Shown here in pieces: positions 1 to 11,355 of a DNA stretch of 64,000 nucleotides (within the stretch, counting starts at the first letter, position 1; every line of letters starts with the position of its first letter). Source of the DNA: Epithemia pelagica. Taxonomy: Eukaryota; Protista; Bacillariophyta. A program made the translations under genes and the position numbers. Where the stretch lies: positions 2,418,001-2,482,000 of the forward strand of contig OX337229.1 in assembly GCA_946965045.2 (NCBI GenBank), in the 5' to 3' direction. The notes under the pieces are model-generated. The model saw only the letters and a list, made by a program, of their open reading frames with translations. It did no database searches and was not told where the DNA came from.

Positions 1-2
1 CA

Positions 3-1959
3 GCCGCCATACACCTCAACCTGGTCGTCCGCCACAAGGCAAACCACCAGGAAGAAGCGGCTCTCCCACGTATCACAGAAAACGCCCTGAAACAACACTT
101 CAACCAAGTCTTCCAACACCATGAACCGCGCGAGTACCCCATGTGGCTACAGGTCCACCGCGTAGAGTTCATCGAAACAAAACAACCAGCCCGACCGAAA
201 GGAAACAACGAAAAAGGACAACGCGGCCATAGTTCATCCTTCCACCTCACCCTGCGTCTGGCACCAGCAAACGACGCCTTTGATATGGAAAACTACATCG
301 AACAAGCCCTACGCTTCGCCACACAAATGTGGCACAAACACCACCGCGACGATTTTCGCAACGATGAACACGGTGCACAATGGATCCTACGCCATGGGGC
401 ACAACAGTCAAACCCGACACTCAACCCCCGCTTCAAGGAGTTAGACGTCTACATCCCTGCATGCAACAACCGAAACTCAACGACGCAAGGAATTATCGCA
501 GGAATTCCTGCACTCGCGGTCAAACACCGCCGCGGATACCTCGACATCGCCACCACCATCCATGATCACCTTTTCGGCCACCTCCCCAGCCAATTTCAAA
601 TGTTCGATGATTTCAGCCAACATTTCGGTTGCAGAGACGGCACCTTCAGCGGAGACATGCGCAACAAACAACGAGGCCAGGTGCCAGTCATCTACTTCTC
701 CGCGTCTTCGAGACACAACTTTGAATTATTCCTCCGCGCCTACAACGCCTTCCACCAGGCCGCCAAGGGAAACGAAATCACTTGGCGCGAAAACGCCCTA
801 CAAGTGCTTCCCATCCCGAAGAACCAACAAACCAGAACCACCACTCTCGAGGCTCTAAAGGACCTTGACCAACATTTCGGAGCAGCGTCAGAATTCGCCT
901 TCACCCACTGAACGATTTGGCCACAGAAGAAGAATGGGACCAACTCACCGAGATCCCACACTACCAGGCCGCATATCCCGAATTTTGCCACCACGACCCG
1001 GAGCCAGTCGCATACTACCTGCATCTGCTCCGCACACCTGACACCCACCATCTCAATGCAACAACCATAAGGAACTATCCGGGGTTTCCATCGAACATCC
1101 TTCGCCCCACCATGGCGGCAGCAGCCGCAGCACCACCAGCCCCAGGCCAAGAACACAACAACTACGAACAACACCAACAGGCCACACACACTTCGCGACT
1201 ACTCGATCTCACCCGCCGGATCACCCAACGAAACCAGAACAACGGAGACAGCGGCGGCAGCACCACAACAACAACAACACCCACACGACCAAGAGCCACC
1301 CCACCAACAACAACTCCCCCCCCCCGAGAAAAAGAGCAGCACCGTCCAACGACACACCAGAAAACAACGACCACGAAAACAACAGCGACCCTTACGAAGA
1401 CAACTCCAACTGGACGACGGTTGCTGAAACCGCCGCCCGCCTGATCAACACCAGACACAACCAAGAAGAATACGAGGTCACAGCAGACAGCCAAAACACC
1501 TGCTCCACCTTATCGTCCACAAACAGATACTCCATCTTGGGAGAACGCCCGGAGGACTCTTACAACGAAGAGACCGACCGATACCACGGGGGAAATCCTA
1601 ACGACGTAGAGATGGACGAGGAAGAACTCGACGAATGGGACAACATGTCCGACTCGAACCGTTCCCACCCTCTCCTCCAACCAGACAACGACAACCCCGC
1701 CAACAATCCATCACAGAACACTTCAGAAGAACTCCACCAGATAACTGCCTTCGTGCACCACCACAACAGCTCCCAACTCCCCGCGCTCGAGGAGTACATT
1801 GAGAAAATACAGTCCTTTTCGACGGACACCGACGCGCAAGACGTCTGGGAATTCGCGGAGCGGCTCGTGAAACAGAAACGGCCGCCCAATTCCCACGTCG
1901 CCGGCACCCGCACCGGCCATGTGGGCCCGCATGAACCACAGGGCCAAGGGGCCAAATGA
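3..1959 (+). CDS. Retrotransposon ORF1 (5'-truncated), reconstructed across two -1 frameshifts
   Basis: The frame is open from base 3 to TGA 909-911. One extra C in CCC 904-906 joins it to ORF 917-1444, and one extra C in the C10 run 1316-1325 joins that to ORF 1537-1959 (PRKRAAPSND...SILGERPEDS). No recognisable domain. Confidence 0.55.
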
Positions 1960-4900
1960 GTACCTCAACCAAACCAATCAGACGCTGTCCAGTCCCCCAC
2001 TGCGACTGGAAGCCCACTCCCAACCCCAACCAAAAAAACACTCAAAAAGACACCGTACTCCAACTAAAACAACACCTGATACACTCACACAACGACACAC
2101 CCATCACAGAACACATGGACGAAGACTTCTGCCAACGACACGGCATGCATGTGTGCTTGCAGTGCAACAAGCCAAGCACTATCTACACGTCGCAAGGACA
2201 CCTCAAGAATCACCAAGACAATAAACATACTAGGACAATCACCAACTTACAACTAGTTCTCAACACGTACAGACACGCCGATGACAACACCAAGGCCAAC
2301 TGGAAAACATCCATCGAGTTCCTCCACGGGCTCAACATCACCCCACCGCCCATCCGGAGAACAATGTGGCACAAACTTAAACAGCCTTCGAGAAAAGAAT
2401 ACTTCGTCGCCTACAACAACATCGTCAACTGGATTTTGGACGCCACCCCGCCACTCCGGGAAGACGAAAAAAGAGACACAAGACCACACCCAGGACAAAC
2501 CGACGCCACCCCTTTTTGGAAGTTGATATTGCTTCTCGAGCCACTCCTGCTCGCACCCACGTCCACCACCGGCCACAAGAGACCATCAGACGCACTGAGG
2601 GCGCGCCACCAGATGATCAAAGAAGGAAAGATCCGGGAACTTTTCGACACCATCTGGAACTCCAATCAAGACTCCACCCAAAACAGCTACCAAACAACAA
2701 CAACCAACAACAACAACAACCAAACAACGATCAGCGACAACTTCCAGACACCAACCCCGATCCCACAAGGTAGAGTGGCAGCGGCACAACGAGCAGCGGA
2801 CGTGGGCAACTATTCCACCGCTTTCAACCGCCTCACCACCAACATGCCGACAGCAACACTGACTCCACAGAGAATCGAAAAAATCCGTAAAGACCTCTTC
2901 CCCCCGAGACGAGACCCTCCACCCGCGACTAGGCACCACGGCCACCTCCACCATCCCCCACCCCCGCGCCAGTTCCTGCAAATCGACAGCGGGCAGTTCG
3001 AGCTGGCCCTCAGACAAATGAAGACGGGAACAGCCTCCGGCCCTTTCGCGTCCTGCACCGATGCAATTGTCTCCATGGCCTTACACCGAACAACACGTGC
3101 GCCCAATTCCACCAGGCCGTACTTCCACAATCTCCAACAACTCCTCCAACTCTTGGTCACGGCACAGCTCCCCCCGGCCGTCCACTCCATCCTCGGTAGC
3201 AACTATTTTCTGGCCCTTCACAAGGACCCAAACAATCTGGAACGCCTCAGACCCATCGGAATCGGGACGGCACTACGACGACTCACTGCCAAAGTTGCTC
3301 TCGTCCACGTCTCCGAAACTGTTCGCCCACTGCTAGTCGCTGGCGGACAATACGGCATACAAGTTCAAGGCGGAATTGACTTTGTCGCCCACACAACGAC
3401 GGCCGCAGTCCACAAGTACATCGTGGAACCGCAAACACCAACGCGAGCGCTCCTCCTCTTGGACCTCCACAATATGTTCAACAACACCTCTCGGACGGAG
3501 GCACGAAAGATCCTCCTCAGCCACGATGCCACCGCACCCCTCATCCCTCTCTTCGACATGTTGACACAAGCCGCAACCCCTTCGTGGTACTTCAACGAAA
3601 ACCACTCCTCCGACAAACTAATGCAAACAGAAGGCTTCCCCCAGGGCTGCCCCCTCAGCCCCCTCTTCTCCTGTCTGGTCCTGGAAGCCCTTACCACCAA
3701 AATCAACAACGAACAAAGACTCCGCGCGGCAGCAAGACTCAGGTCGGGCAACACACATGACGACGGCAAGGGAGGCCAGGCCCACACGGCCTCCATCATG
3801 GACGATACGTCCATTTGCCTCCCCCACGAAGACCTCCCCTGGTTCCTCCAACGATTCGAAGAACTCGGGCGGCCTTTGGGGGTGGACCTCAATAAACAAA
3901 AAACACTCATCCTTACCACAACAACGGGTATCTCCCCAACCAACTCCCTCCCCATTGAAAACAAACAATGCCTGAGACAAGCCCTCACCATGTTAGATCC
4001 ACAACACCCGGACCACCGAGAAATCACCGGCGGGACGCGTTTCTTAGGACAACCAATCGGGTCCCAGGACTTCGCACGCCAGTTCATCACTCTTAGACTC
4101 AAAACCATGGCGGCCAAGATGGAACTCCTTGCGCACCTTCCTGACCTCCAGACTCGCAGCCACCTCTTCCGCTACTCGGTGGTGCCCTCCATTCTGCATC
4201 TCCTTCCCGCCGACCTCGTCATCGCCCACCCGGCTCCACAAGCCACCACCACCAACTGGGACAGCCCCACGACCAAGACAACACAACTCCTCGTCACCAA
4301 ATTTCTGGCCATGCTCACGGCCCTTCCAACGACCGACATCACTGCAACTGCCATCTTAATCGCCACACTGCCAAACCGATTGGGCGGGCTGGGCTATAAC
4401 AGTGCCTCGGCCGCCGCGAGACCGTCTCTCATCACCCAGACAGCCCGAACCATCAAAATCGCTGCCTCCACGGAAACACCAGTCCCTGCCCCCCACAAAC
4501 TGTTCTGGTCCGACTGGGAACACAGCGAACTCCCCTGGATTGTCGCATACCGCCGTTCCCTGGCCCTGTTCGCCAATGAATTCGCCCCCGACGCCATCAG
4601 CAATCCAACACGATTTGACCACACCACCCATAGACACCTCCTCCACCACACCTTCGTGGAGCACACCGTCCCGGCCTTGATCGAGGCCACACCAGCTGAC
4701 ATGCGCCCGTCTCTTCCTTCGGCCCTGTCCCCTCTCACGAGCCTGGCGTTGCACCTCCCCAGAACTGCCGAAGCCTTCCGCCTCGACAACGCCACTTTCG
4801 CTACCGCTATCAAGCGCAAACTCCGCCTCCCAGTCTTGCCCGCCTCCTTCCGCCGCCGACGTTGCCATTGCCCTGCCTCGCCGATGTTGGATCCCGAAGG

Positions 4901-5816
4901 CGACCATTTCTTTTCATGCACAGCAGCCAACAAAACCGCCCTCTCCAACACCATCCGAGACGTTGTTTTTGATGTGCTGCAACATGTGGCCCCCCAAGCA
5001 GGCCTCGTCGACGACCACCGGGACGTCCACATCGAACCCCCAGGTCTCGCGCCCCAACATTCACGCAACATCAGACCCGCCGACGTTGGTTTATTGTTGC
5101 GTCAACCCCACAAGAACGAGCCGTTCCACTACGTAGCTCTAGATGTCACCATCCCCCCTCCTCCGACAAGAACGCCAATTCCCGACCCGGCCGACCATAC
5201 CGCCCTTGCCTCTGCTGCTTCGAGGCCGCATCAGGAATCCGCGCGCTCCAAGTTCTGCAGAGACGATGACACTGCCGTGCACCTCCTCCGCAACGGCATC
5301 TACCTTCTCCCGTTCACCATCGATCATTTGGGCTCCCTGGGATCATTTGCACACTCTTTCTTGTTCCACCAGGATGACCTCCCGCATCCATTCTCATCAG
5401 CGGTCCCTCCCGTCTGGAACGATGGCCACTTTGGACGCCATCCATCACGATCCAAAACACATCCTGCCTCTTTCGCTCTCTACGAAAACCTCAAAGACCT
5501 CCCACGCAATCTTGCCGCAAAAGCCACAGCCAGAACCCCGGGCTTCTCTTTCCCAGAGGCATTTATCAACTCACTCGGACATTTTGCAAAAGCTTCGCTC
5601 TCTCATGCGATCGTCTCCTCCTTGGCAACACACTTGAACAAACAAATCGCGACATTACGTGCAACAGAATATAACAGCCGAATCCAAAAAACTCAGCGTG
5701 CCCGATTGGAACGAATGGGTTTCGCCCCACAACAAAACCTATACACTCCCTTCACGTTAGCACAATTCTTCCCTTCTCACCACCAACCCCACCTGCTCTG
5801 CGGTACGGCCGCTTAG
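1956..5816 (+). CDS. Retrotransposon ORF2: two C2H2 zinc fingers, reverse transcriptase, CCHC knuckle and PD-(D/E)xK restriction-like endonuclease (1286 aa)
   Basis: Zinc fingers CPVPHC..HLIHSH and CLQC..HQDNKH. RT motifs LRPIGIGTALRRL, QYGI, LLLDLHNMFN, GFPQGCPLSP, SIMDD and FLGQPIG. Knuckle CHC..H..C. Nuclease motifs RPADV..LDVTI..SKF. Uninterrupted ORF. Confidence 0.93.
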   Translation: MSTSTKPIRRCPVPHCDWKPTPNPNQKNTQKDTVLQLKQHLIHSHNDTPITEHMDEDFCQRHGMHVCLQCNKPSTIYTSQGHLKNHQDNKHTRTITNLQLVLNTYRHADDNTKANWKTSIEFLHGLNITPPPIRRTMWHKLKQPSRKEYFVAYNNIVNWILDATPPLREDEKRDTRPHPGQTDATPFWKLILLLEPLLLAPTSTTGHKRPSDALRARHQMIKEGKIRELFDTIWNSNQDSTQNSYQTTTTNNNNNQTTISDNFQTPTPIPQGRVAAAQRAADVGNYSTAFNRLTTNMPTATLTPQRIEKIRKDLFPPRRDPPPATRHHGHLHHPPPPRQFLQIDSGQFELALRQMKTGTASGPFASCTDAIVSMALHRTTRAPNSTRPYFHNLQQLLQLLVTAQLPPAVHSILGSNYFLALHKDPNNLERLRPIGIGTALRRLTAKVALVHVSETVRPLLVAGGQYGIQVQGGIDFVAHTTTAAVHKYIVEPQTPTRALLLLDLHNMFNNTSRTEARKILLSHDATAPLIPLFDMLTQAATPSWYFNENHSSDKLMQTEGFPQGCPLSPLFSCLVLEALTTKINNEQRLRAAARLRSGNTHDDGKGGQAHTASIMDDTSICLPHEDLPWFLQRFEELGRPLGVDLNKQKTLILTTTTGISPTNSLPIENKQCLRQALTMLDPQHPDHREITGGTRFLGQPIGSQDFARQFITLRLKTMAAKMELLAHLPDLQTRSHLFRYSVVPSILHLLPADLVIAHPAPQATTTNWDSPTTKTTQLLVTKFLAMLTALPTTDITATAILIATLPNRLGGLGYNSASAAARPSLITQTARTIKIAASTETPVPAPHKLFWSDWEHSELPWIVAYRRSLALFANEFAPDAISNPTRFDHTTHRHLLHHTFVEHTVPALIEATPADMRPSLPSALSPLTSLALHLPRTAEAFRLDNATFATAIKRKLRLPVLPASFRRRRCHCPASPMLDPEGDHFFSCTAANKTALSNTIRDVVFDVLQHVAPQAGLVDDHRDVHIEPPGLAPQHSRNIRPADVGLLLRQPHKNEPFHYVALDVTIPPPPTRTPIPDPADHTALASAASRPHQESARSKFCRDDDTAVHLLRNGIYLLPFTIDHLGSLGSFAHSFLFHQDDLPHPFSSAVPPVWNDGHFGRHPSRSKTHPASFALYENLKDLPRNLAAKATARTPGFSFPEAFINSLGHFAKASLSHAIVSSLATHLNKQIATLRATEYNSRIQKTQRARLERMGFAPQQNLYTPFTLAQFFPSHHQPHLLCGTAA

Positions 5817-6298
5817 CAACACCGAAAGTATTCTAGACCACTAAAATAAAAAAAAAAAAAAAAACTGCATGATCGGACCATGCCTCGTCAAGACGACGAC
5901 CACCATAACAAGCAAAAGAACGCGAAGATGAACAGGAAAATGAAGCACTACTTCATAATTGGTTGACATTACTTCATTCTGTTCCGATGCGATATATCAT
6001 TACTAGATGTTGGACAGCAGCATTGTCAAGGAACGAAGCAATCACCATACAACCCCAAACAGTCTCAGTAAACAGAGCAGTCACTTTTCCTCACTCGTTG
6101 GTTGCGTCAGATGTAGGCAACGCTCACCGGGAGTTGGTTGCAAGAGGAGACAACTACTTTCAAATCCAACCAGACTTTGTTGCCACGGGACACGGGCCAG
6201 TGCATAGGTTGCCAAGCCTCACGAGAGAAGACTTTTGATTCTGAGAGATACTTATGCCACTGGGACGTGTGCCTAGCCCCACAGGCACTGTTTTTCTC

Positions 6299-7966
6299 TC
6301 AGGTCATGTGGCTACTTGGTTTCTTGCTTCCCAATCCATACAAGGATCGGTATCCAAAGTATCGGGGCAGGATTCGTAACAGACACAAATCACCAAACAA
6401 CTCCACGACACTCAAAAGCGAAATACCCAAAAAGAGTCCCATGGACCCACCAACAGCCGCCAGCAATTGGGCAAAGCTCATTTCTTTGGATTCCGTTAGT
6501 TTTTCGAATTGAATCTTGTCGTAATTCACTTGAATCCAAACCAAGTTATCCTTAATGTATTGCTGCGTAAAGGTTGGTTGGGGCAATTGCCGTTCCAATT
6601 GTGCCAAGAGAGCGTTGCTCAAGGTCATTTGGGAGACGGACATGTCGTAGATTGTTTCGGAACAGGGTGGCAAAGAACAATCGCCACCAATTATTGTACT
6701 CCTTCTATTCTTGTCATCACCATTCGTCTTCTTCACATCCCGATAGGGAACACCACAATGATCTAAAATGGCCGTTTCGTTCCATAATTTTTCTTGTCGA
6801 CACTTGTCCAATTCATCCTGTCGACAAAAAGGCAAGTTTCCAGCGGTGGTAGGATCTCCCCACGTTTTGCATCCACATGCGTGGCGTTGTGCGGCATGCC
6901 AACACTGCGTACGGCATTTGGCCTGGGTATACGCAGGTGCCTCGGAGAAACAACGGGCCCAGGGTGCCTGTCGTTCTCGTTCAACGAGGGTGGGATGAAT
7001 TCGAATCAAGGTATTGTGCCCCGGGGAGGCCGTCACATAGGGAACTTGATCCGATAGCAGTGTCCCTGGGCTTTGAATAAAGACCAACATACCTGCCACT
7101 TCGGAAATGGCAGTCGTAGTCTCACTATTGTTGTTGGGAACTTGGAAAAAGTCGTCTTGATACAATAAACCAATGACCTGCAATCCAGCCGCCATGCCCG
7201 GTCGTACAATGCGAAGGGAGGTATCAAAAGACCAACAACGACCAAAATCAGTCCATCGTTCGGTCCACCTAGAAGTATTGTGGTTTTGTTGTTGATCATG
7301 GTTGGTGTTGCCCACGGAAAGACCATTGAATTCTGGTCCAAAAATTAATTCAGAATAATCCCAACTGGTTTGCTGAAATTCTAAAGTGGTCGTTGGTTCG
7401 TCAATGCCCAAAATGTTGAGTTTCTGTTGCGACAGCGGATTGGTGCTGCACAAGGTCACTTGAGGAAAGGGCAGTGATCGGGGAGTAATGGTTTCAGTGT
7501 CAGTCAGGACCTTGTAGGACCGATATTGCGTAATCAAGGCCTCAAATTGCCAAATCATTAACCCAGCCGATGCACAAGTCAGAGTCAACCATGCCAAACG
7601 TTTCCAAGCCTTCCATGTTTCCCCGTCTGTAACATTGGCTACGCCGTGAATAGAAGTGCCTTGTGCCCATTCATTGACCACCAGCGGCAACCTAGCATCG
7701 TCATCATAGTCATTTTTCAGATTGATTGAATTATTCTCATTGGCAATATCGTCGTCCTTCACTAAATTGTCCCCCTTCTCGTTCAAGAACGACAGGGAAG
7801 ACGACCGTTCCTCTTGGCGTGAGGCAGCGCCATCGAGCTCTTTGTTATCTTGCCTTGATTGTTGTGCTTGTTCTTCTTCGTCTGGTGCCGGACCTTCCAA
7901 AGCAGCTGATGATGAGGAGGCTTGTTCTTGGTTGATAGCAGAAGAACGCTGCACTAGGACCGTCAT
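6299..7966 (-). CDS. DEG/ENaC/ASIC-family (amiloride-sensitive sodium channel-like) protein, intronless, about 555 aa from ATG 7966
   Basis: Pre-TM1 SIHG motif, TM1, FPQVTLCSTNP, FGRCWSF, Cys-rich thumb (C..QC..CGC..C..PPC..Y) and TM2 LLAAVGGSMGLFLGISLLSVVE. Confidence 0.92.
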   Translation of the reverse strand: MTVLVQRSSAINQEQASSSSAALEGPAPDEEEQAQQSRQDNKELDGAASRQEERSSSLSFLNEKGDNLVKDDDIANENNSINLKNDYDDDARLPLVVNEWAQGTSIHGVANVTDGETWKAWKRLAWLTLTCASAGLMIWQFEALITQYRSYKVLTDTETITPRSLPFPQVTLCSTNPLSQQKLNILGIDEPTTTLEFQQTSWDYSELIFGPEFNGLSVGNTNHDQQQNHNTSRWTERWTDFGRCWSFDTSLRIVRPGMAAGLQVIGLLYQDDFFQVPNNNSETTTAISEVAGMLVFIQSPGTLLSDQVPYVTASPGHNTLIRIHPTLVERERQAPWARCFSEAPAYTQAKCRTQCWHAAQRHACGCKTWGDPTTAGNLPFCRQDELDKCRQEKLWNETAILDHCGVPYRDVKKTNGDDKNRRSTIIGGDCSLPPCSETIYDMSVSQMTLSNALLAQLERQLPQPTFTQQYIKDNLVWIQVNYDKIQFEKLTESKEMSFAQLLAAVGGSMGLFLGISLLSVVELFGDLCLLRILPRYFGYRSLYGLGSKKPSSHMT

Positions 7967-9048
7967 GGTCGTCAATGCCCTTTTCCGTGTGTTTGCGGAG
8001 ACAGTTTGGCGATACAATAAAAAGCGGCAGCGCCAAGATCGCTCGACTGGTCCTTTGTTTCAAAGCCTACGTGGAGTTCAGTGGAGATGACAGAGCAATA
8101 GCAATGGGCTGGATGCATAGAGACTTCTCACTTCTCACAATAGATTCGCAAGCGACAGCGCCCACACCCCACACCCCACACCCACACGCACAAAGTCACT
8201 TTCTTTCGCTGTTTTGGTTATATTGTACGAGTTCTACTTGGGGGACGACGGAGAGTTCTTTCTGCACGTGTAACTACTTGTAGCCTGCCGCTTCGGTCAC
8301 ATAGGAGGGCTCATTCGAGAGGCTTAAGTAAATATAATTCGACGCGAGGAGAGCGCTCTCCTTCTTCTTGGCCTCTCACTTTCCTGGGACATGTTTTCCG
8401 TTTTCCTCCTTCCTCGATCTGTTGATGATGGTTGTCTCGTTGGCGGGAGAGTACGTGGAGAAGAAGAATACGGCTCTGCAGAATAATGGAAGAGGGATAC
8501 AAGTCAATTATTCTGGACTGGACGGAATGAAAAGATAATGATGATGATAAACGGCCTGAAGACTGCACTTGGCACCACCACGCTGGAACGAACGACGTTG
8601 GACGTTGAGACGCGGCGAAGCCGTGTCTTGGTTTCGTTTCGTTTGGTGCCGTCCAGAGAAATGCAATGACAAACATGAGGATGTGTCTGTTTGTAGAATG
8701 GTTGCTTTCCTCATTGAAGTAATTGGGTTGGAATTGAACACCATTTCGAGGATGATGGGAATTTGATATCGACCACAATTTTTCATCAATTTGCCGAACA
8801 ACAGTATCCGTAAAAGAGAAAGAAAAGTGACCCGTTTGTGTGCATACTCTAAGGTGTTGTGTGTGGCCTGCCTCTATGTACTAGATGGGGATTTTGCCGA
8901 GCACGACACCGGAGGACAGCGAGATGAATACGCTCGAACAGTTTCGCTGAAGTTTTAAGCTCAGCTGTGATTGGTTGTTGATTTCACCGCAAAATCCCTG
9001 TTTACAACCTCAAGAGGAGAGAGTTGCCACATTATTACTTGATTAGCC

Positions 9049-11355
9049 ATGGCGAAAAAGAAGAAGAAAAGTAAATCCAAAGGGTCCCACAGCAACAGGA
9101 ACAAACTCCGAGATGCGGCATCTGTGCACGAGAAGAATGATGACCCAGTTGCTGTTGTCTCATCGGCCTTTTTTGTGGATTCCATATTGCGAGAAGGAGA
9201 TCGCGTCGTGTTGCGAAATCTTCAGTCGAGGGAATTTAATGAGAAACTGGGCACTGTGAAACGACTTTGTCGGGTTGAACCTGTTCAGGAAACATCACGT
9301 TTTGGTATTCTTGTGGATGGCTCAAGTGAACCAGTAGCAATTCAGGCCAAGAACATTGCCCCAATTTTCCAAATCAACGAACGAGTGACAATCAATGGCT
9401 TGACAGACAAGTCCTTGAACGGAGACTTTGGAACAATTGTTCAAGTTCCCCCAAATGTTTCTAACAGCGATTGCCGCTACAAGGTTAAAATGGCCAACTT
9501 TGACAAGCAAAAAGACACTGTCTGGATTCCTGCCGAAAATTTGTTCCGGACCGAGCGTACATCTACAAAAGAGCAGGCGCAGAAAAGAGAAGCCATGATC
9601 AATATTTCCGAGATGCCGACGGAGGAGTGCATGGACGCATTTCAGCTCTCCATGGTTCGACAAATGATGACTTTTTTGTCACCATCGGATCAAGTCAAAA
9701 TGTTTGGAAGAACGATAAGTCCAATGCCAAACTTTTACGAAGAGGTGTTACAAGCCAACGGGTTTCCCCATGGGGTGGACCGAGATTGGGCTGCGACTCA
9801 TCTACATCAGGCATTTGAACAAGCGAGCCACCTTCCTCATATGATGGAACTCATGTATCGGAATGGGGACAAGGACGCGGTTAGTCCTCATGATATTGTC
9901 AAGCGGCTCGGGACGAATAATACCCAGAAACTGCATTGGTACTTTCATGCCTCTTGTGCTGGAGAAATTTATCCCAATGCAGGACAAGAGGGGATATACT
10001 GTCCGTATGTTCGGCATAGCTATAGCAATCAAGCTTATCGGCAAGAACGATTGCAGTGTGGCACCACCCATGTCGCGGTAGGTTTTGTTGACCTGGGAAT
10101 TCTCTTGACCATGGATCTTGTGGTAGAACCTCCTGTGATGGGAAAGGCTGGACCACTGCATTTCCTTGGCGTTGAACAGAGTTCCTATTCTGTTGCAAAG
10201 GCACTCTTGATATGGGAAATGCTCAAGTGTTTTCCACAACAAAAAACCAAGTCACTGGAGGATACCCATTTGCAGCGTTATGCTTGGTCGATTCTACAGG
10301 TCTGGTTCAGCACAACATGGGGCCCTGGAACAGAAGAAATTGTTCGACGTTGTTTGTCAAATCTCTGCGAAAGTCAACGGTACCATCCAGAAGTACGGGC
10401 TATATTGGACCATTGGAACAATGCTGCATCCCTCTCATTGTATTCTGCAAGAGATCAAACCATCAATGCAACAACCTCGAAGAGGACCTACATTGGAAAC
10501 TTTCTGCGGCGTCGGGACCGCTTGGCCATGGCCAAGTACGAACTCTCTCGAGACTTTGGCCTCAGTGGTGAAAAGCCCGTATGTGGTAATCTCATCATGT
10601 TTGATTGTCCTGATGGAACTGCTCCATTGGAGAAGGACGAAACTGTCTTTTCGGCACTCAACGTCACCGAAATTATGAAGGTAATGCAAGCTGATTCGTC
10701 TCTTTCGATTATAGATGCGGCCGAAAAGTATTCCCATTCAAAGCTTCTAGAGCTCGCATTGAAAGTCCAGTCGAATTTTATCTCAATCGAACTCATCTGT
10801 GACCGCGTGGAAAACGTGTTGGAGGATCTAGCATCCCGGAAACCATGGACCATGAGTTGGTCAAATCTCAGCGATTACTTCAAATACGACGAATTTCATG
10901 CCATGGCACGAAAATGTTCCATTCATGGTGATACCGTCCACTATGGGTATTCCATGAATTGGCCCTCCCAGGTCTTTGGTGTCCAGATTACCGATTATGC
11001 TCGTTTGCCTGTGCACAATCGAACCCGCGAATGGAAAAAGATTTTGGATCAGGGTACTCGAATGGTGGAATTGGCCTATTCCATTTATGGATGGAGCGAC
11101 TTTTTGCGGACTCCTCCGCCGACCAATCCCATAAATACTTCGGCAAACTTTGTGTTGGAGCCTCTTCACTATCGAGCTTGGATTGACCATTTCTTTGTAC
11201 AATCCATGGCTGGAGAAGGTGGACCATGTCAGGTGGGACATGTGGAACATGCTGGTGGCCGGTCTCCCTTTTCCCCAACGGGTTGCAGCACGATCTACTT
11301 CACATGGACCTATGATCCCGACATCAAGTTTCAATCGTTAGGGTTTGGCCTTTAA
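9049..11355 (+). CDS. Hypothetical protein with two N-terminal SH3/KOW-like repeats and a C-terminal DUF4470/SAM-methyltransferase-like region (768 aa)
   Basis: Long ATG-initiated ORF. Repeats GDRVVLRNL..FNEKLGTV..RFGILVD and NERVTINGL..LNGDFGTI..RYKVKM. C-terminal VGFVDLG..LHFLGVEQ..VAKALLIWEML..LQVWFS pattern. The domain names are tentative. Confidence 0.7.
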   Translation: MAKKKKKSKSKGSHSNRNKLRDAASVHEKNDDPVAVVSSAFFVDSILREGDRVVLRNLQSREFNEKLGTVKRLCRVEPVQETSRFGILVDGSSEPVAIQAKNIAPIFQINERVTINGLTDKSLNGDFGTIVQVPPNVSNSDCRYKVKMANFDKQKDTVWIPAENLFRTERTSTKEQAQKREAMINISEMPTEECMDAFQLSMVRQMMTFLSPSDQVKMFGRTISPMPNFYEEVLQANGFPHGVDRDWAATHLHQAFEQASHLPHMMELMYRNGDKDAVSPHDIVKRLGTNNTQKLHWYFHASCAGEIYPNAGQEGIYCPYVRHSYSNQAYRQERLQCGTTHVAVGFVDLGILLTMDLVVEPPVMGKAGPLHFLGVEQSSYSVAKALLIWEMLKCFPQQKTKSLEDTHLQRYAWSILQVWFSTTWGPGTEEIVRRCLSNLCESQRYHPEVRAILDHWNNAASLSLYSARDQTINATTSKRTYIGNFLRRRDRLAMAKYELSRDFGLSGEKPVCGNLIMFDCPDGTAPLEKDETVFSALNVTEIMKVMQADSSLSIIDAAEKYSHSKLLELALKVQSNFISIELICDRVENVLEDLASRKPWTMSWSNLSDYFKYDEFHAMARKCSIHGDTVHYGYSMNWPSQVFGVQITDYARLPVHNRTREWKKILDQGTRMVELAYSIYGWSDFLRTPPPTNPINTSANFVLEPLHYRAWIDHFFVQSMAGEGGPCQVGHVEHAGGRSPFSPTGCSTIYFTWTYDPDIKFQSLGFGL

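What the first reader, a model, noticed from the sequence alone, without database searches (positions are those of the whole stretch)
6299..7966. Complete DEG/ENaC-family ion channel in a diatom-like alga
Seen: all hallmark elements are present, namely the HG gating motif, two TMs, FPxVTLC, GxCxxF, the Cys-rich thumb and GGxMGLFLGxS. The gene is intronless and lies about 430 bp from a retroelement tail. Established: the family is chiefly metazoan (ASIC, ENaC, FaNaC), with only sparse reports from unicellular eukaryotes. Inference: it could be a proton-, peptide- or mechano-gated Na+ channel relevant to diatom excitability or signalling, with an origin by ancient retention or horizontal transfer.
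Basis: partly seen in the sequence, partly recalled or inferred. Interest (0 to 1): 0.72.

Follow-up and report, generated by a model that had tools for sequence, protein, structure and literature searches.

The report
Diatom ASIC-like (DEG/ENaC) channel gene
This is a real, intact and apparently transcribed gene for a DEG/ENaC (ASIC-like) sodium-channel subunit in a diatom genome; it is one of about 13 copies there and belongs to a diatom-specific branch that databases hold but that nobody seems to have tested.

Summary
Window 6299-7966 (minus strand) is one uninterrupted 555-codon ORF. It matches Pfam ASC/PF00858 at E 1.1e-62, matches solved ASIC, ENaC and FaNaC chains by sequence, and folds like ASIC1a.

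The host genome is a diatom: it carries at least 12 full-length silicon-transporter genes. It holds about 13 DEG/ENaC loci on six contigs, so contamination is excluded.

A run of the same organism gives one gap-free contig over the gene and nothing over the upstream spacer or the neighbouring retroelement. This reads as an intronless transcript, although the run's kind is not on record.

An exhaustive profile search plus trees place the gene in a strongly supported clade (100/99). Every named member is a pennate diatom: Seminavis (already annotated "Acid-sensing ion channel"), Epithemia, Entomoneis and Synedropsis. The clade is set apart by a G-I-S filter, a short conserved C-terminal tail and a shortened finger.

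Pore residues are conserved, but ASIC proton-sensor residues are not. I read it as a subunit of a trimeric, Na+-preferring channel whose gating cue is unknown and probably not ASIC-type.

The scan found this family before on other DNA of this genome (s1-238883, s1-239077). It is a new member of a known kind, of moderate interest.

The parts
6299..7966 (-). Coding sequence of the DEG/ENaC subunit: 555 codons plus the stop at 6299-6301, single exon
   Evidence: ORF list. Pfam ASC E 1.1e-62. Both Pfam pieces lie in one open frame. A gap-free contig of run X1 covers 5874-7827.
7967..8027 (-). Probable 5' untranslated region (inferred)
   Evidence: X1 contigs reach 8027 and then stop. X1 has no cover over 8171-8472, whereas run X4 covers all of it. 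An in-frame stop lies just upstream of the TTG at 8017.
5874..6298 (-). Probable 3' untranslated region (inferred). It runs up to the poly(A) tail of the neighbouring retroelement.
   Evidence: The same X1 contig continues from the stop codon down to 5874. The tool masks the repeat at 5835-5873. Sequence read.
7643..7648 (-). HG motif (H107-G108) in the pre-TM1 segment
   Evidence: G108 is invariant and H107 nearly invariant in the 50-sequence alignment A2. Aligned with the HG of ASICs.
7520..7609 (-). TM1 (residues 120-149)
   Evidence: Helix 120-149 in the AlphaFold model, pLDDT about 90-98. Aligned to ASIC TM1. It did not pass the 1.5 threshold of the 19-residue hydropathy scan.
6476..7519 (-). 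Extracellular domain (residues 150-497), including the post-TM1 FPxVTxC motif, the GxCxxF motif and a shortened finger
   Evidence: Alignments A1 and A2. The profile alignment to chicken ASIC1 skips chain residues about 113-155. The fold matches ASIC1a.
6662..6952 (-). Cys-rich thumb (C339 to C435, ten cysteines), with a copy-specific insertion of about 25 residues at about 405-429
   Evidence: All ten cysteines align with the ten thumb cysteines of ASIC1. The insertion is seen only in this copy and has low pLDDT of 56-70.
6359..6475 (-). TM2 (residues 498-536)
   Evidence: Hydropathy peak, model helices 498-513 and 517-536, and alignment to ASIC TM2.
6419..6427 (-). G514-I515-S516, the G/S-x-S selectivity-filter position
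   Evidence: G and S are invariant in all 50 sequences. Ile is present in 35 of 37 diatom-type rows, against Ala in ASICs.
6329..6379 (-). Clade-specific cytoplasmic tail motif, residues 530-546 (pattern LR-x-x-PR-x-F/W-G-x-R-x-L-x-G-x-G)
   Evidence: Invariant or nearly invariant in A1. Present in the diatom-type proteins and absent from the metazoan hits.

Best explanation
The locus is an intact, single-exon nuclear gene of a diatom, probably a pennate. It encodes one subunit of a DEG/ENaC-superfamily channel.

By homology, three such subunits form a pore. Each has an intracellular N-terminus with the HG re-entrant segment, TM1, a large disulfide-braced ectodomain, TM2 and a short tail. The pore is lined by TM2 and the HG segment and passes Na+ preferentially.

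The pore determinants are conserved: G-x-S, the Gly at the amiloride site, and the lower-TM2 Glu and Asp/Glu. The ectodomain differs from ASICs in three ways: the H73 equivalent is Val, the acidic-pocket carboxylates are not kept, and the finger is shortened.

I therefore expect opening by an extracellular cue other than ASIC-style protonation, such as a ligand, an ion or osmotic change, or mechanical load. Constitutive activity is also possible.

Shown here: gene integrity, family membership, fold, residue conservation, diatom origin, a multigene family, and a diatom-specific clade. Inferred: transcription (the run's kind is not on record), trimeric assembly, Na+ preference, plasma-membrane location and the gating cue.
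For: Family and fold:
- Pfam ASC at 213 bits.
- phmmer and profile hits to solved ASIC1/2/5, ENaC, FaNaC and PPK chains, down to E 4e-49.
- AlphaFold model with mean pLDDT 80.7, high over residues 90-550. The best Foldseek matches are ASIC1a chains at E 1e-29, TM-score 0.71-0.75 over about 460 columns.

Residue conservation:
- 12 invariant cysteines align with 6 of the 7 ASIC1 disulfides.
- In 37 diatom-type sequences, G and S of G-x-S, the Gly four residues before it, and the lower-TM2 Glu are all 37/37. The next acidic position is D or E in 37/37.

Diatom host and family size:
- At least 12 Silic_transp loci with E down to 2e-226.
- 26 PF00858 matches at about 13 loci on contigs C2, C3, C8, C10, C17 and C18.

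Transcription:
- The X1 contig runs gap-free over 5874-7827 and on to 8027. X1 has zero depth over the retroelement and over 8171-8472, while X4 covers everything.
- Depth differs from the neighbouring gene (79 against 11.5).
- Small pieces, 100% and 97% identical, occur in two marine metatranscriptomes.

Clade:
- The diatom-type clade of 38 rows has support 100/99 and a stem of 1.16.
- Named members are Seminavis robusta, Epithemia clementina, Entomoneis paludosa and Synedropsis sp..
Against: - No current has been measured for any member of this clade, and no paper on it was found.
- Run X1 is of unrecorded kind, and contigs cannot show strand or level, so transcription is inferred from the pattern of cover only.
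- Ile in the filter, a one-residue shift of the lower acidic residue relative to ASIC, and the unusual tail could change selectivity or gating.
- The two-copy complex prediction gave no verdict.
- This copy carries two private insertions (about 215-233 and about 405-429) in the ectodomain, with low model confidence.
Confidence: 0.8

Rival explanations
1. It works as a true acid-sensing channel: extracellular protons open it, as in animal ASICs. This is also what the Seminavis annotation 'Acid-sensing ion channel' implies.
For: The diatom profile scores highest against ASIC1/ASIC2 chains (170 bits), ahead of ENaC-alpha (132) and FaNaC (83). The K211 equivalent is basic in 22 of 37 diatom-type rows, and is Arg here. 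Placozoan TadNaC2 shows that proton gating can arise without ASIC residues (PMC10507113).
Against: The H73/H74 equivalent aligns with Val. The acidic-pocket equivalents of D237/E238 and D345/D349 are gapped or non-acidic here and unconserved in the clade. The diatom clade lies outside the sampled ASIC groups with 100/99 support. Database names of this kind are transferred automatically.
Confidence: 0.15
2. On origin only: the family reached diatoms by horizontal transfer from an animal or another eukaryote, rather than by vertical retention from an early eukaryotic ancestor.
For: The distribution is patchy. Every named member is a pennate diatom. Published surveys found DEG/ENaC outside animals only in a few protists and discuss lateral transfer (PMC10507113). 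Most copies here are intronless.
Against: The clade has a long stem and is not nested in any sampled metazoan group. It has its own signatures. It had already diversified into at least three subclades shared between this genome and other diatoms. Any transfer would therefore be old. The tree is unrooted and lacks Cafeteria, Tunicaraptor and clade-B animals, so direction cannot be read.
Confidence: 0.35
3. It is a decaying or silent gene copy with no function.
For: It lies next to a LINE-like element. Three of the roughly 13 family loci in this genome show stops or frame breaks. Ten of the 16 listed allelic differences are non-synonymous.
Against: The 555-codon frame is open and every family-invariant residue is kept. 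The non-synonymous differences fall in the disordered N-terminus and the variable 194-222 stretch, not in the core. The pattern of cover looks like a transcript.
Confidence: 0.04
4. It is animal contamination or a misjoin in the assembly.
For: The family is best known from animals.
Against: The window lies 2.42 Mb into contig C2. Twelve further loci lie on five other contigs of a genome full of silicon-transporter genes. G+C content is even across the window outside the retroelement. Four runs of the same organism hold the gene, with two alleles. The nearest relatives are diatom proteins, not animal ones.
Confidence: 0.01

Closest known systems
Acid-sensing ion channels ASIC1/ASIC2 (solved structures such as 6ave, 4nyk, 9e4a, 6l6p)
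   Same: Best sequence and fold matches. Same topology, HG motif, post-TM1 FPxVTxC motif, GxCxxF motif, ten-cysteine thumb, pre-TM2/TM2 block and lower-TM2 acidic residues.
   Different: Only 20-25% identity. Ile replaces Ala in the G-A-S belt. The H73 equivalent is Val. Acidic-pocket carboxylates are not conserved. The finger is about 40 residues shorter and lacks the C173-C180 disulfide. The diatom tail motif replaces the ASIC C-terminus. The protein sits in a separate clade.
Diatom DEG/ENaC homologues already in databases (Seminavis robusta CAB9519788.1 'Acid-sensing ion channel'; Epithemia clementina KAL7556919.1 and relatives; Entomoneis paludosa A0A7S2YC09; Synedropsis sp. CCMP1620 transcript)
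   Same: Same clade, with the same G-I-S filter and C-terminal tail motif and similar lengths of 450-550 aa. Identity to the window protein is 35-43%.
   Different: They are paralogues or orthologues from other species. The nearest relative of the window copy is a paralogue on contig C17 of the same genome (48-52% identity). None has been characterised.
Non-animal DEG/ENaC homologues reported by Elkhatib et al. 2023 (Cafeteria roenbergensis, Tunicaraptor unikontum, Symbiodinium)
   Same: They show that the family exists outside Metazoa, including in a heterokont (PMC10507113).
   Different: Diatoms are not mentioned in the passages I read.
ENaC, degenerins, FaNaC and PPK (clade-B DEG/ENaC)
   Same: Same superfamily and fold. 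The G/S-x-S filter and the amiloride-site small residue are conserved.
   Different: Profile scores are lower (132 to 67 bits). There is no PPxY motif in the tail (read from the sequence). There is no large finger or GRIP-type insertion.

Membership tests
DEG/ENaC superfamily (Pfam ASC, PF00858) | Profile match above the curated threshold over most of the domain | tested here: met
   213 bits against a cut-off of 23.6. Profile positions 3-106 and 166-453 of 455 are matched.
DEG/ENaC superfamily (Pfam ASC, PF00858) | Two transmembrane helices flanking a large ectodomain, with a fold like ASIC | tested here: met
   Model helices 120-149 and 498-536. The hydropathy scan flags only the second. Foldseek finds ASIC1a at E 1e-29, TM 0.71-0.75.
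DEG/ENaC superfamily (Pfam ASC, PF00858) | HG motif before TM1 | tested here: met
   H107-G108. G is invariant and H is at least 90% conserved in A2.
DEG/ENaC superfamily (Pfam ASC, PF00858) | G/S-x-S selectivity filter in TM2, with a small residue at the amiloride site four positions before it | tested here: met
   G514-I515-S516 and G510. G, S and G510 are conserved in 37/37 diatom-type rows and in all 50 rows of A2.
DEG/ENaC superfamily (Pfam ASC, PF00858) | Conserved ectodomain cysteines (seven disulfides in ASIC1) | tested here: met
   Twelve invariant cysteines correspond to six of the seven pairs. The finger pair C173-C180 is absent from the whole diatom clade.
DEG/ENaC superfamily (Pfam ASC, PF00858) | Assembly as a trimer | tested here: inconclusive
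   A two-copy prediction of residues 92-540 scored 0.05, 'no answer'. Three copies exceed the tool's size limit.
DEG/ENaC superfamily (Pfam ASC, PF00858) | Amiloride-sensitive, Na+-preferring, voltage-independent current | not testable with these tools
   Needs electrophysiology.
ASIC subfamily (proton-gated) | His73 and Lys211 (rat ASIC1a numbering, from established literature) needed for proton sensitivity | tested here: not met
   The H73/H74 equivalent aligns with Val. The K211 equivalent is Arg here and varies in the clade: R18, Q4, K4, L3 and others.
ASIC subfamily (proton-gated) | Acidic-pocket carboxylate pairs between thumb, finger and beta-ball | tested here: not met
   The equivalents of D237, E238, D345 and D349 are gap, A, Q and W in the window protein, and are unconserved in 37 diatom-type rows.
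ASIC subfamily (proton-gated) | Phylogenetic placement inside the ASIC clade | tested here: not met
   The diatom-type clade is separated from fish ASIC1b, Saccoglossus ASIC3-like and the other top-scoring non-diatom sequences with support 100/99.
ENaC subfamily | C-terminal PPxY (PY) motif | tested here: not met
   The 25-residue tail after TM2 holds no PPxY. It carries the diatom-specific motif instead.
Diatom-type DEG/ENaC clade (defined here) | G-I-S filter plus the conserved tail motif after TM2, and placement in the clade | tested here: met
   Both signatures are present. The protein sits within the 38-row clade, sister to the contig C17 paralogue with support 100/96.

The most novel reading that the evidence does not exclude
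Diatom-type DEG/ENaC channels form an old, independently diversified branch of the family. They would act as surface sensors of pennate diatoms, opened by a cue that no animal member uses: for example a pheromone or other small ligand, an ionic or osmotic change, or load on the cell surface during gliding. They would feed Na+-based depolarisation into diatom excitability. If the branch proves vertically inherited within stramenopiles, DEG/ENaC channels are not an animal invention.
Probability: 0.25. Interest if true: 0.8.

Novelty: new member of a known kind. Interest (0 to 1): 0.5.

Why it matters
DEG/ENaC channels are textbook 'animal' channels for salt balance, touch, pain and neuropeptide signalling. 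This genome shows a family of about 13 genes with conserved pore residues and its own signatures. Together with relatives in at least four other pennate diatom genera, that is a concrete and clonable set of non-animal members.

Testing them would address two open questions. The first is where the family came from. The second is which channels carry the fast Na+-dependent electrical signals and surface sensing of diatoms. The single-exon genes are easy to express.

The gene as such is not a discovery. Relatives are already in public proteomes under automatic names, and the scan has already reported the family from two other places in this genome.

Tried and rejected
- **Word-index protein searches.** The searches with the single protein and with alignment A1 each returned only four proteins. 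They say nothing about how rare the family is, and the exhaustive profile search replaced them.
- **Complex prediction.** Two copies of residues 92-540 scored 0.05, 'no answer'. This is neither for nor against trimer formation, and a three-copy job exceeds the size limit.
- **Protein-atlas look-up.** It returned only arthropod PF00858 clusters, which does not help with distribution.
- **Paper searches.** Searches combining ENaC, ASIC, degenerin, amiloride-sensitive sodium channel and PF00858 with diatom terms found no description of diatom DEG/ENaC channels. The one hit was a 2026 preprint listing PF00858 among domains of marine algal proteins.
- **Readings rejected.** Animal contamination, pseudogene and ASIC orthology were considered and rejected; see the rival explanations.
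- **Not done.** The third word-index search was left unused on cost grounds. The organism's name is coded in the run table and could not be recovered. Centric diatoms, other ochrophytes and model diatoms could not be searched with these tools, so 'pennate-only' is an impression from named hits, not a result.

Full report
**1. Observation**

The ORF list shows a minus-strand frame open from 8017 to 6299.

- Pfam-A gives one family, ASC/PF00858, at 213 bits and E 1.1e-62, against a gathering score of 23.6.
- phmmer against solved structures finds ASIC2, ASIC1, ASIC5, FaNaC, ENaC alpha/beta/gamma/delta and PPK chains.
- The upstream neighbour is a 1,286-aa reverse-transcriptase ORF (RVT_1). Its element ends in a poly(A) run at about 5846-5865, roughly 434 bp from the channel gene's stop.

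**2. Host genome and contamination**

The window is C2:2418001-2482000 of a 60.5-Mb assembly in 23 contigs.

- A six-frame scan with the silicon-transporter profile PF03842 finds 17 matches at about 12 or more loci, with E down to 2e-226. This marks a diatom genome.
- The same scan with PF00858 gives 26 matches at about 13 loci. These are this one on C2, one on C17, four or five in a cluster on C3 (3.49-3.53 Mb), four on C8 (0.65-0.69 Mb), two in tandem on C10 and one on C18.
- Seven loci are uninterrupted single-exon ORFs. Three have the N- and C-terminal parts in different frames, as expected for one intron. Three show stops or frame breaks.

With G+C even across the window outside the retroelement, an animal contaminant or a misjoin is excluded.

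**3. Transcription and gene model**

Four runs of one coded organism hold 76-98% of the sampled words of the gene.

Laid on 5000-9500, run X1 behaves as follows. It has 39 million letters of contigs, less than the genome, and its kind is not on record.
- A 2,032-letter contig lies gap-free on 5874-7827, and short contigs reach 8027.
- There is nothing over 5000-5755 (the retroelement) or 8171-8472.
- A separate contig of much lower depth (11.5 against 79) runs from 8530 into the next gene.

Run X4 covers every bin. The simplest reading is that X1 is a transcriptome. On that reading the gene is transcribed as one unspliced exon, with about 60 nt of 5' UTR and about 425 nt of 3' UTR. This is an inference from where contigs lie, not a shown fact.

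Two marine metatranscriptomes hold small pieces, 100% and 97% identical.

Two alleles are visible. Of 16 listed differences inside the CDS, six are synonymous. The ten non-synonymous ones lie in the disordered N-terminus or the variable stretch 194-222.

**4. Relatives**

The word-index search found only three other proteins, among them one from Epithemia clementina. Repeating it with an alignment of own paralogues did no better.

An exhaustive HMMER search with that alignment (A1) gave 9,385 representatives at E <= 1e-3 and 297 at E <= 1e-30. Scores drop clearly after about 60 entries.

Those top entries share two signatures absent from the rest:
- Ile in the filter (G-I-S).
- A conserved cytoplasmic tail directly after TM2, with the pattern LR-x-x-PR-x-F/W-G-x-R-x-L-x-G-x-G.

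Cluster look-ups name the members as follows:
- Epithemia clementina.
- Entomoneis paludosa (MMETSP transcripts).
- Seminavis robusta (CAB9519788.1, annotated 'Acid-sensing ion channel').
- Synedropsis sp. CCMP1620.
- The remainder are unnamed metagenome, MMETSP or Logan proteins.

The lower-scoring group contains fish ASIC1b and Saccoglossus ASIC3-like.

In a maximum-likelihood tree (LG+C20 PMSF, 66 rows) the 38 diatom-type rows form one side of a branch, with support 100/99 and length 1.16 (earlier trees).
- The window protein is sister to the C17 paralogue (100/96, 48-52% identity).
- The C3 and C8 paralogues group with proteins of other diatoms. The family had therefore diversified before these species split.
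- Two unnamed metagenomic proteins of odd composition are weakly sister to the clade.
- The tree is unrooted and lacks clade-B animal channels and the published protist sequences, so the origin cannot be decided.

**5. Structure and residues**

AlphaFold2 with a 50-row alignment gives mean pLDDT 80.7. The first 88 residues are disordered and residues 90-550 are mostly above 85. Foldseek's best matches are ASIC1a, ASIC2a and ASIC5 chains (E 1e-29 to 1e-24, TM 0.65-0.75 by target, about 460 columns), followed by FaNaC.

The profile alignment to chicken ASIC1 shows three things:
- About 40 residues of the finger (chain residues 113-155) have no counterpart.
- The C173-C180 pair is missing, while the other six disulfides are kept.
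- The proton-sensor His aligns with Val.

Column counts over 37 diatom-type sequences:

| Position (ASIC equivalent) | Window residue | State in the 37 rows |
|---|---|---|
| G of G-x-S | G514 | 37/37 |
| S of G-x-S | S516 | 37/37 |
| Gly four residues before the filter (amiloride site in ENaC/ASIC, from established knowledge) | G510 | 37/37 |
| Lower-TM2 Glu | E522 | 37/37 |
| Following acidic residue | D526 | D or E, 37/37 |
| K211 | R | R18, Q4, K4, L3, others |
| E219 | Q | not conserved |
| D237 | gap | gap in 31 |
| E238 | A | not conserved |
| D345 | Q | not conserved |
| D349 | W | not conserved |

**6. Mechanism**

Shown: an intact member of the DEG/ENaC superfamily with a conserved pore and a clade-specific ectodomain and tail.

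Inferred from the family:
- A trimer with a TM2/HG-lined, Na+-preferring, voltage-independent pore.
- Gating driven from the ectodomain.

Because the ASIC proton-sensing residues fail the test, I rate ASIC-type acid gating at about 0.15. I favour another extracellular cue or constitutive activity.

The two-copy complex prediction gave no verdict.

The conserved tail is a candidate trafficking or gating element. That is speculation.

**7. Literature and novelty**

Elkhatib et al. 2023 (PMC10507113) document DEG/ENaC homologues outside animals in Cafeteria, Tunicaraptor and Symbiodinium, and discuss gene loss versus lateral transfer. Diatoms do not appear in the passages I read.

- No paper combines 'degenerin' with 'diatoms'.
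- Searches with related terms found nothing on diatom channels of this family.
- The one exception is a 2026 preprint listing PF00858 among domains of marine algal proteins.

The scan itself has already reported the family from this genome: the C3 cluster (s1-238883, with a follow-up reaching the same conclusion) and a tandem pair (s1-239077).

The gene is therefore a new member of a known kind. It belongs to a branch that databases hold and that papers, as far as searched, do not describe.

**8. Verdict**

- Function and origin remain open.
- Interest is moderate at 0.5. The whole diatom branch, rather than this copy, is the interesting object.

Noticed in passing
window 1-5865 (+): A LINE-like non-LTR retroelement. 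It has a 1,286-aa ORF at 1956-5816 with RVT_1 (E 3.4e-10) and a 3' poly(A) run at about 5846-5865. G+C is 0.55 with strong negative GC skew (-0.30 to -0.34), unlike the rest of the window. It sits tail-to-tail with the channel gene, and run X1 shows no contigs over 5000-5755.
   Followed up: partly
window 9049-11355 (+): A 768-aa ORF with no Pfam family, divergent from the channel gene. An X1 contig of lower depth (11.5) runs from 8530 into it. This suggests a transcribed gene with a long 5' leader or an upstream exon.
   Followed up: no
window 6680-6754 and about 7268-7324 (residues about 405-429 and about 215-233): Two insertions private to this copy: a basic stretch of about 25 residues inside the thumb, and an N/Q-rich stretch in the finger region. 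Both have low model confidence.
   Followed up: partly
G000:C3:3522255-3525925, G000:C8:693697-694731: Three family loci with internal stops or split frames. They may be pseudogenes or intron-bearing copies. The C10 and C18 copies seem to share one intron between profile positions about 97 and about 202.
   Followed up: no
P0123, P0149 (metagenome proteins): Two unnamed DEG/ENaC proteins of unusual composition sit as weak sister (81/84) to the diatom clade. They lack the tail motif and may come from another protist lineage.
   Followed up: no
P0080 (2,330 aa, 9 matched stretches), P0070, P0076, P0077, P0079 (about 950-1,150 aa): Very long proteins with several ASC-profile stretches appear among the representative hits. 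They may be tandem-fused DEG/ENaC subunits or merged gene models.
   Followed up: no
control line: The PF00858 six-frame scan 'rings' above the cut-off in the control genome Thermotoga maritima. This is an unexpected bacterial hit to an animal-type channel profile and may be spurious.
   Followed up: no
L013 (ENA contig ctg3005l, 8001-9572): The 42%-identical homologue P0003 in another assembly is also single-exon. It also sits among transposable-element genes (RVT_2, retrotransposon gag, DDE_Tnp_1_7).
   Followed up: no
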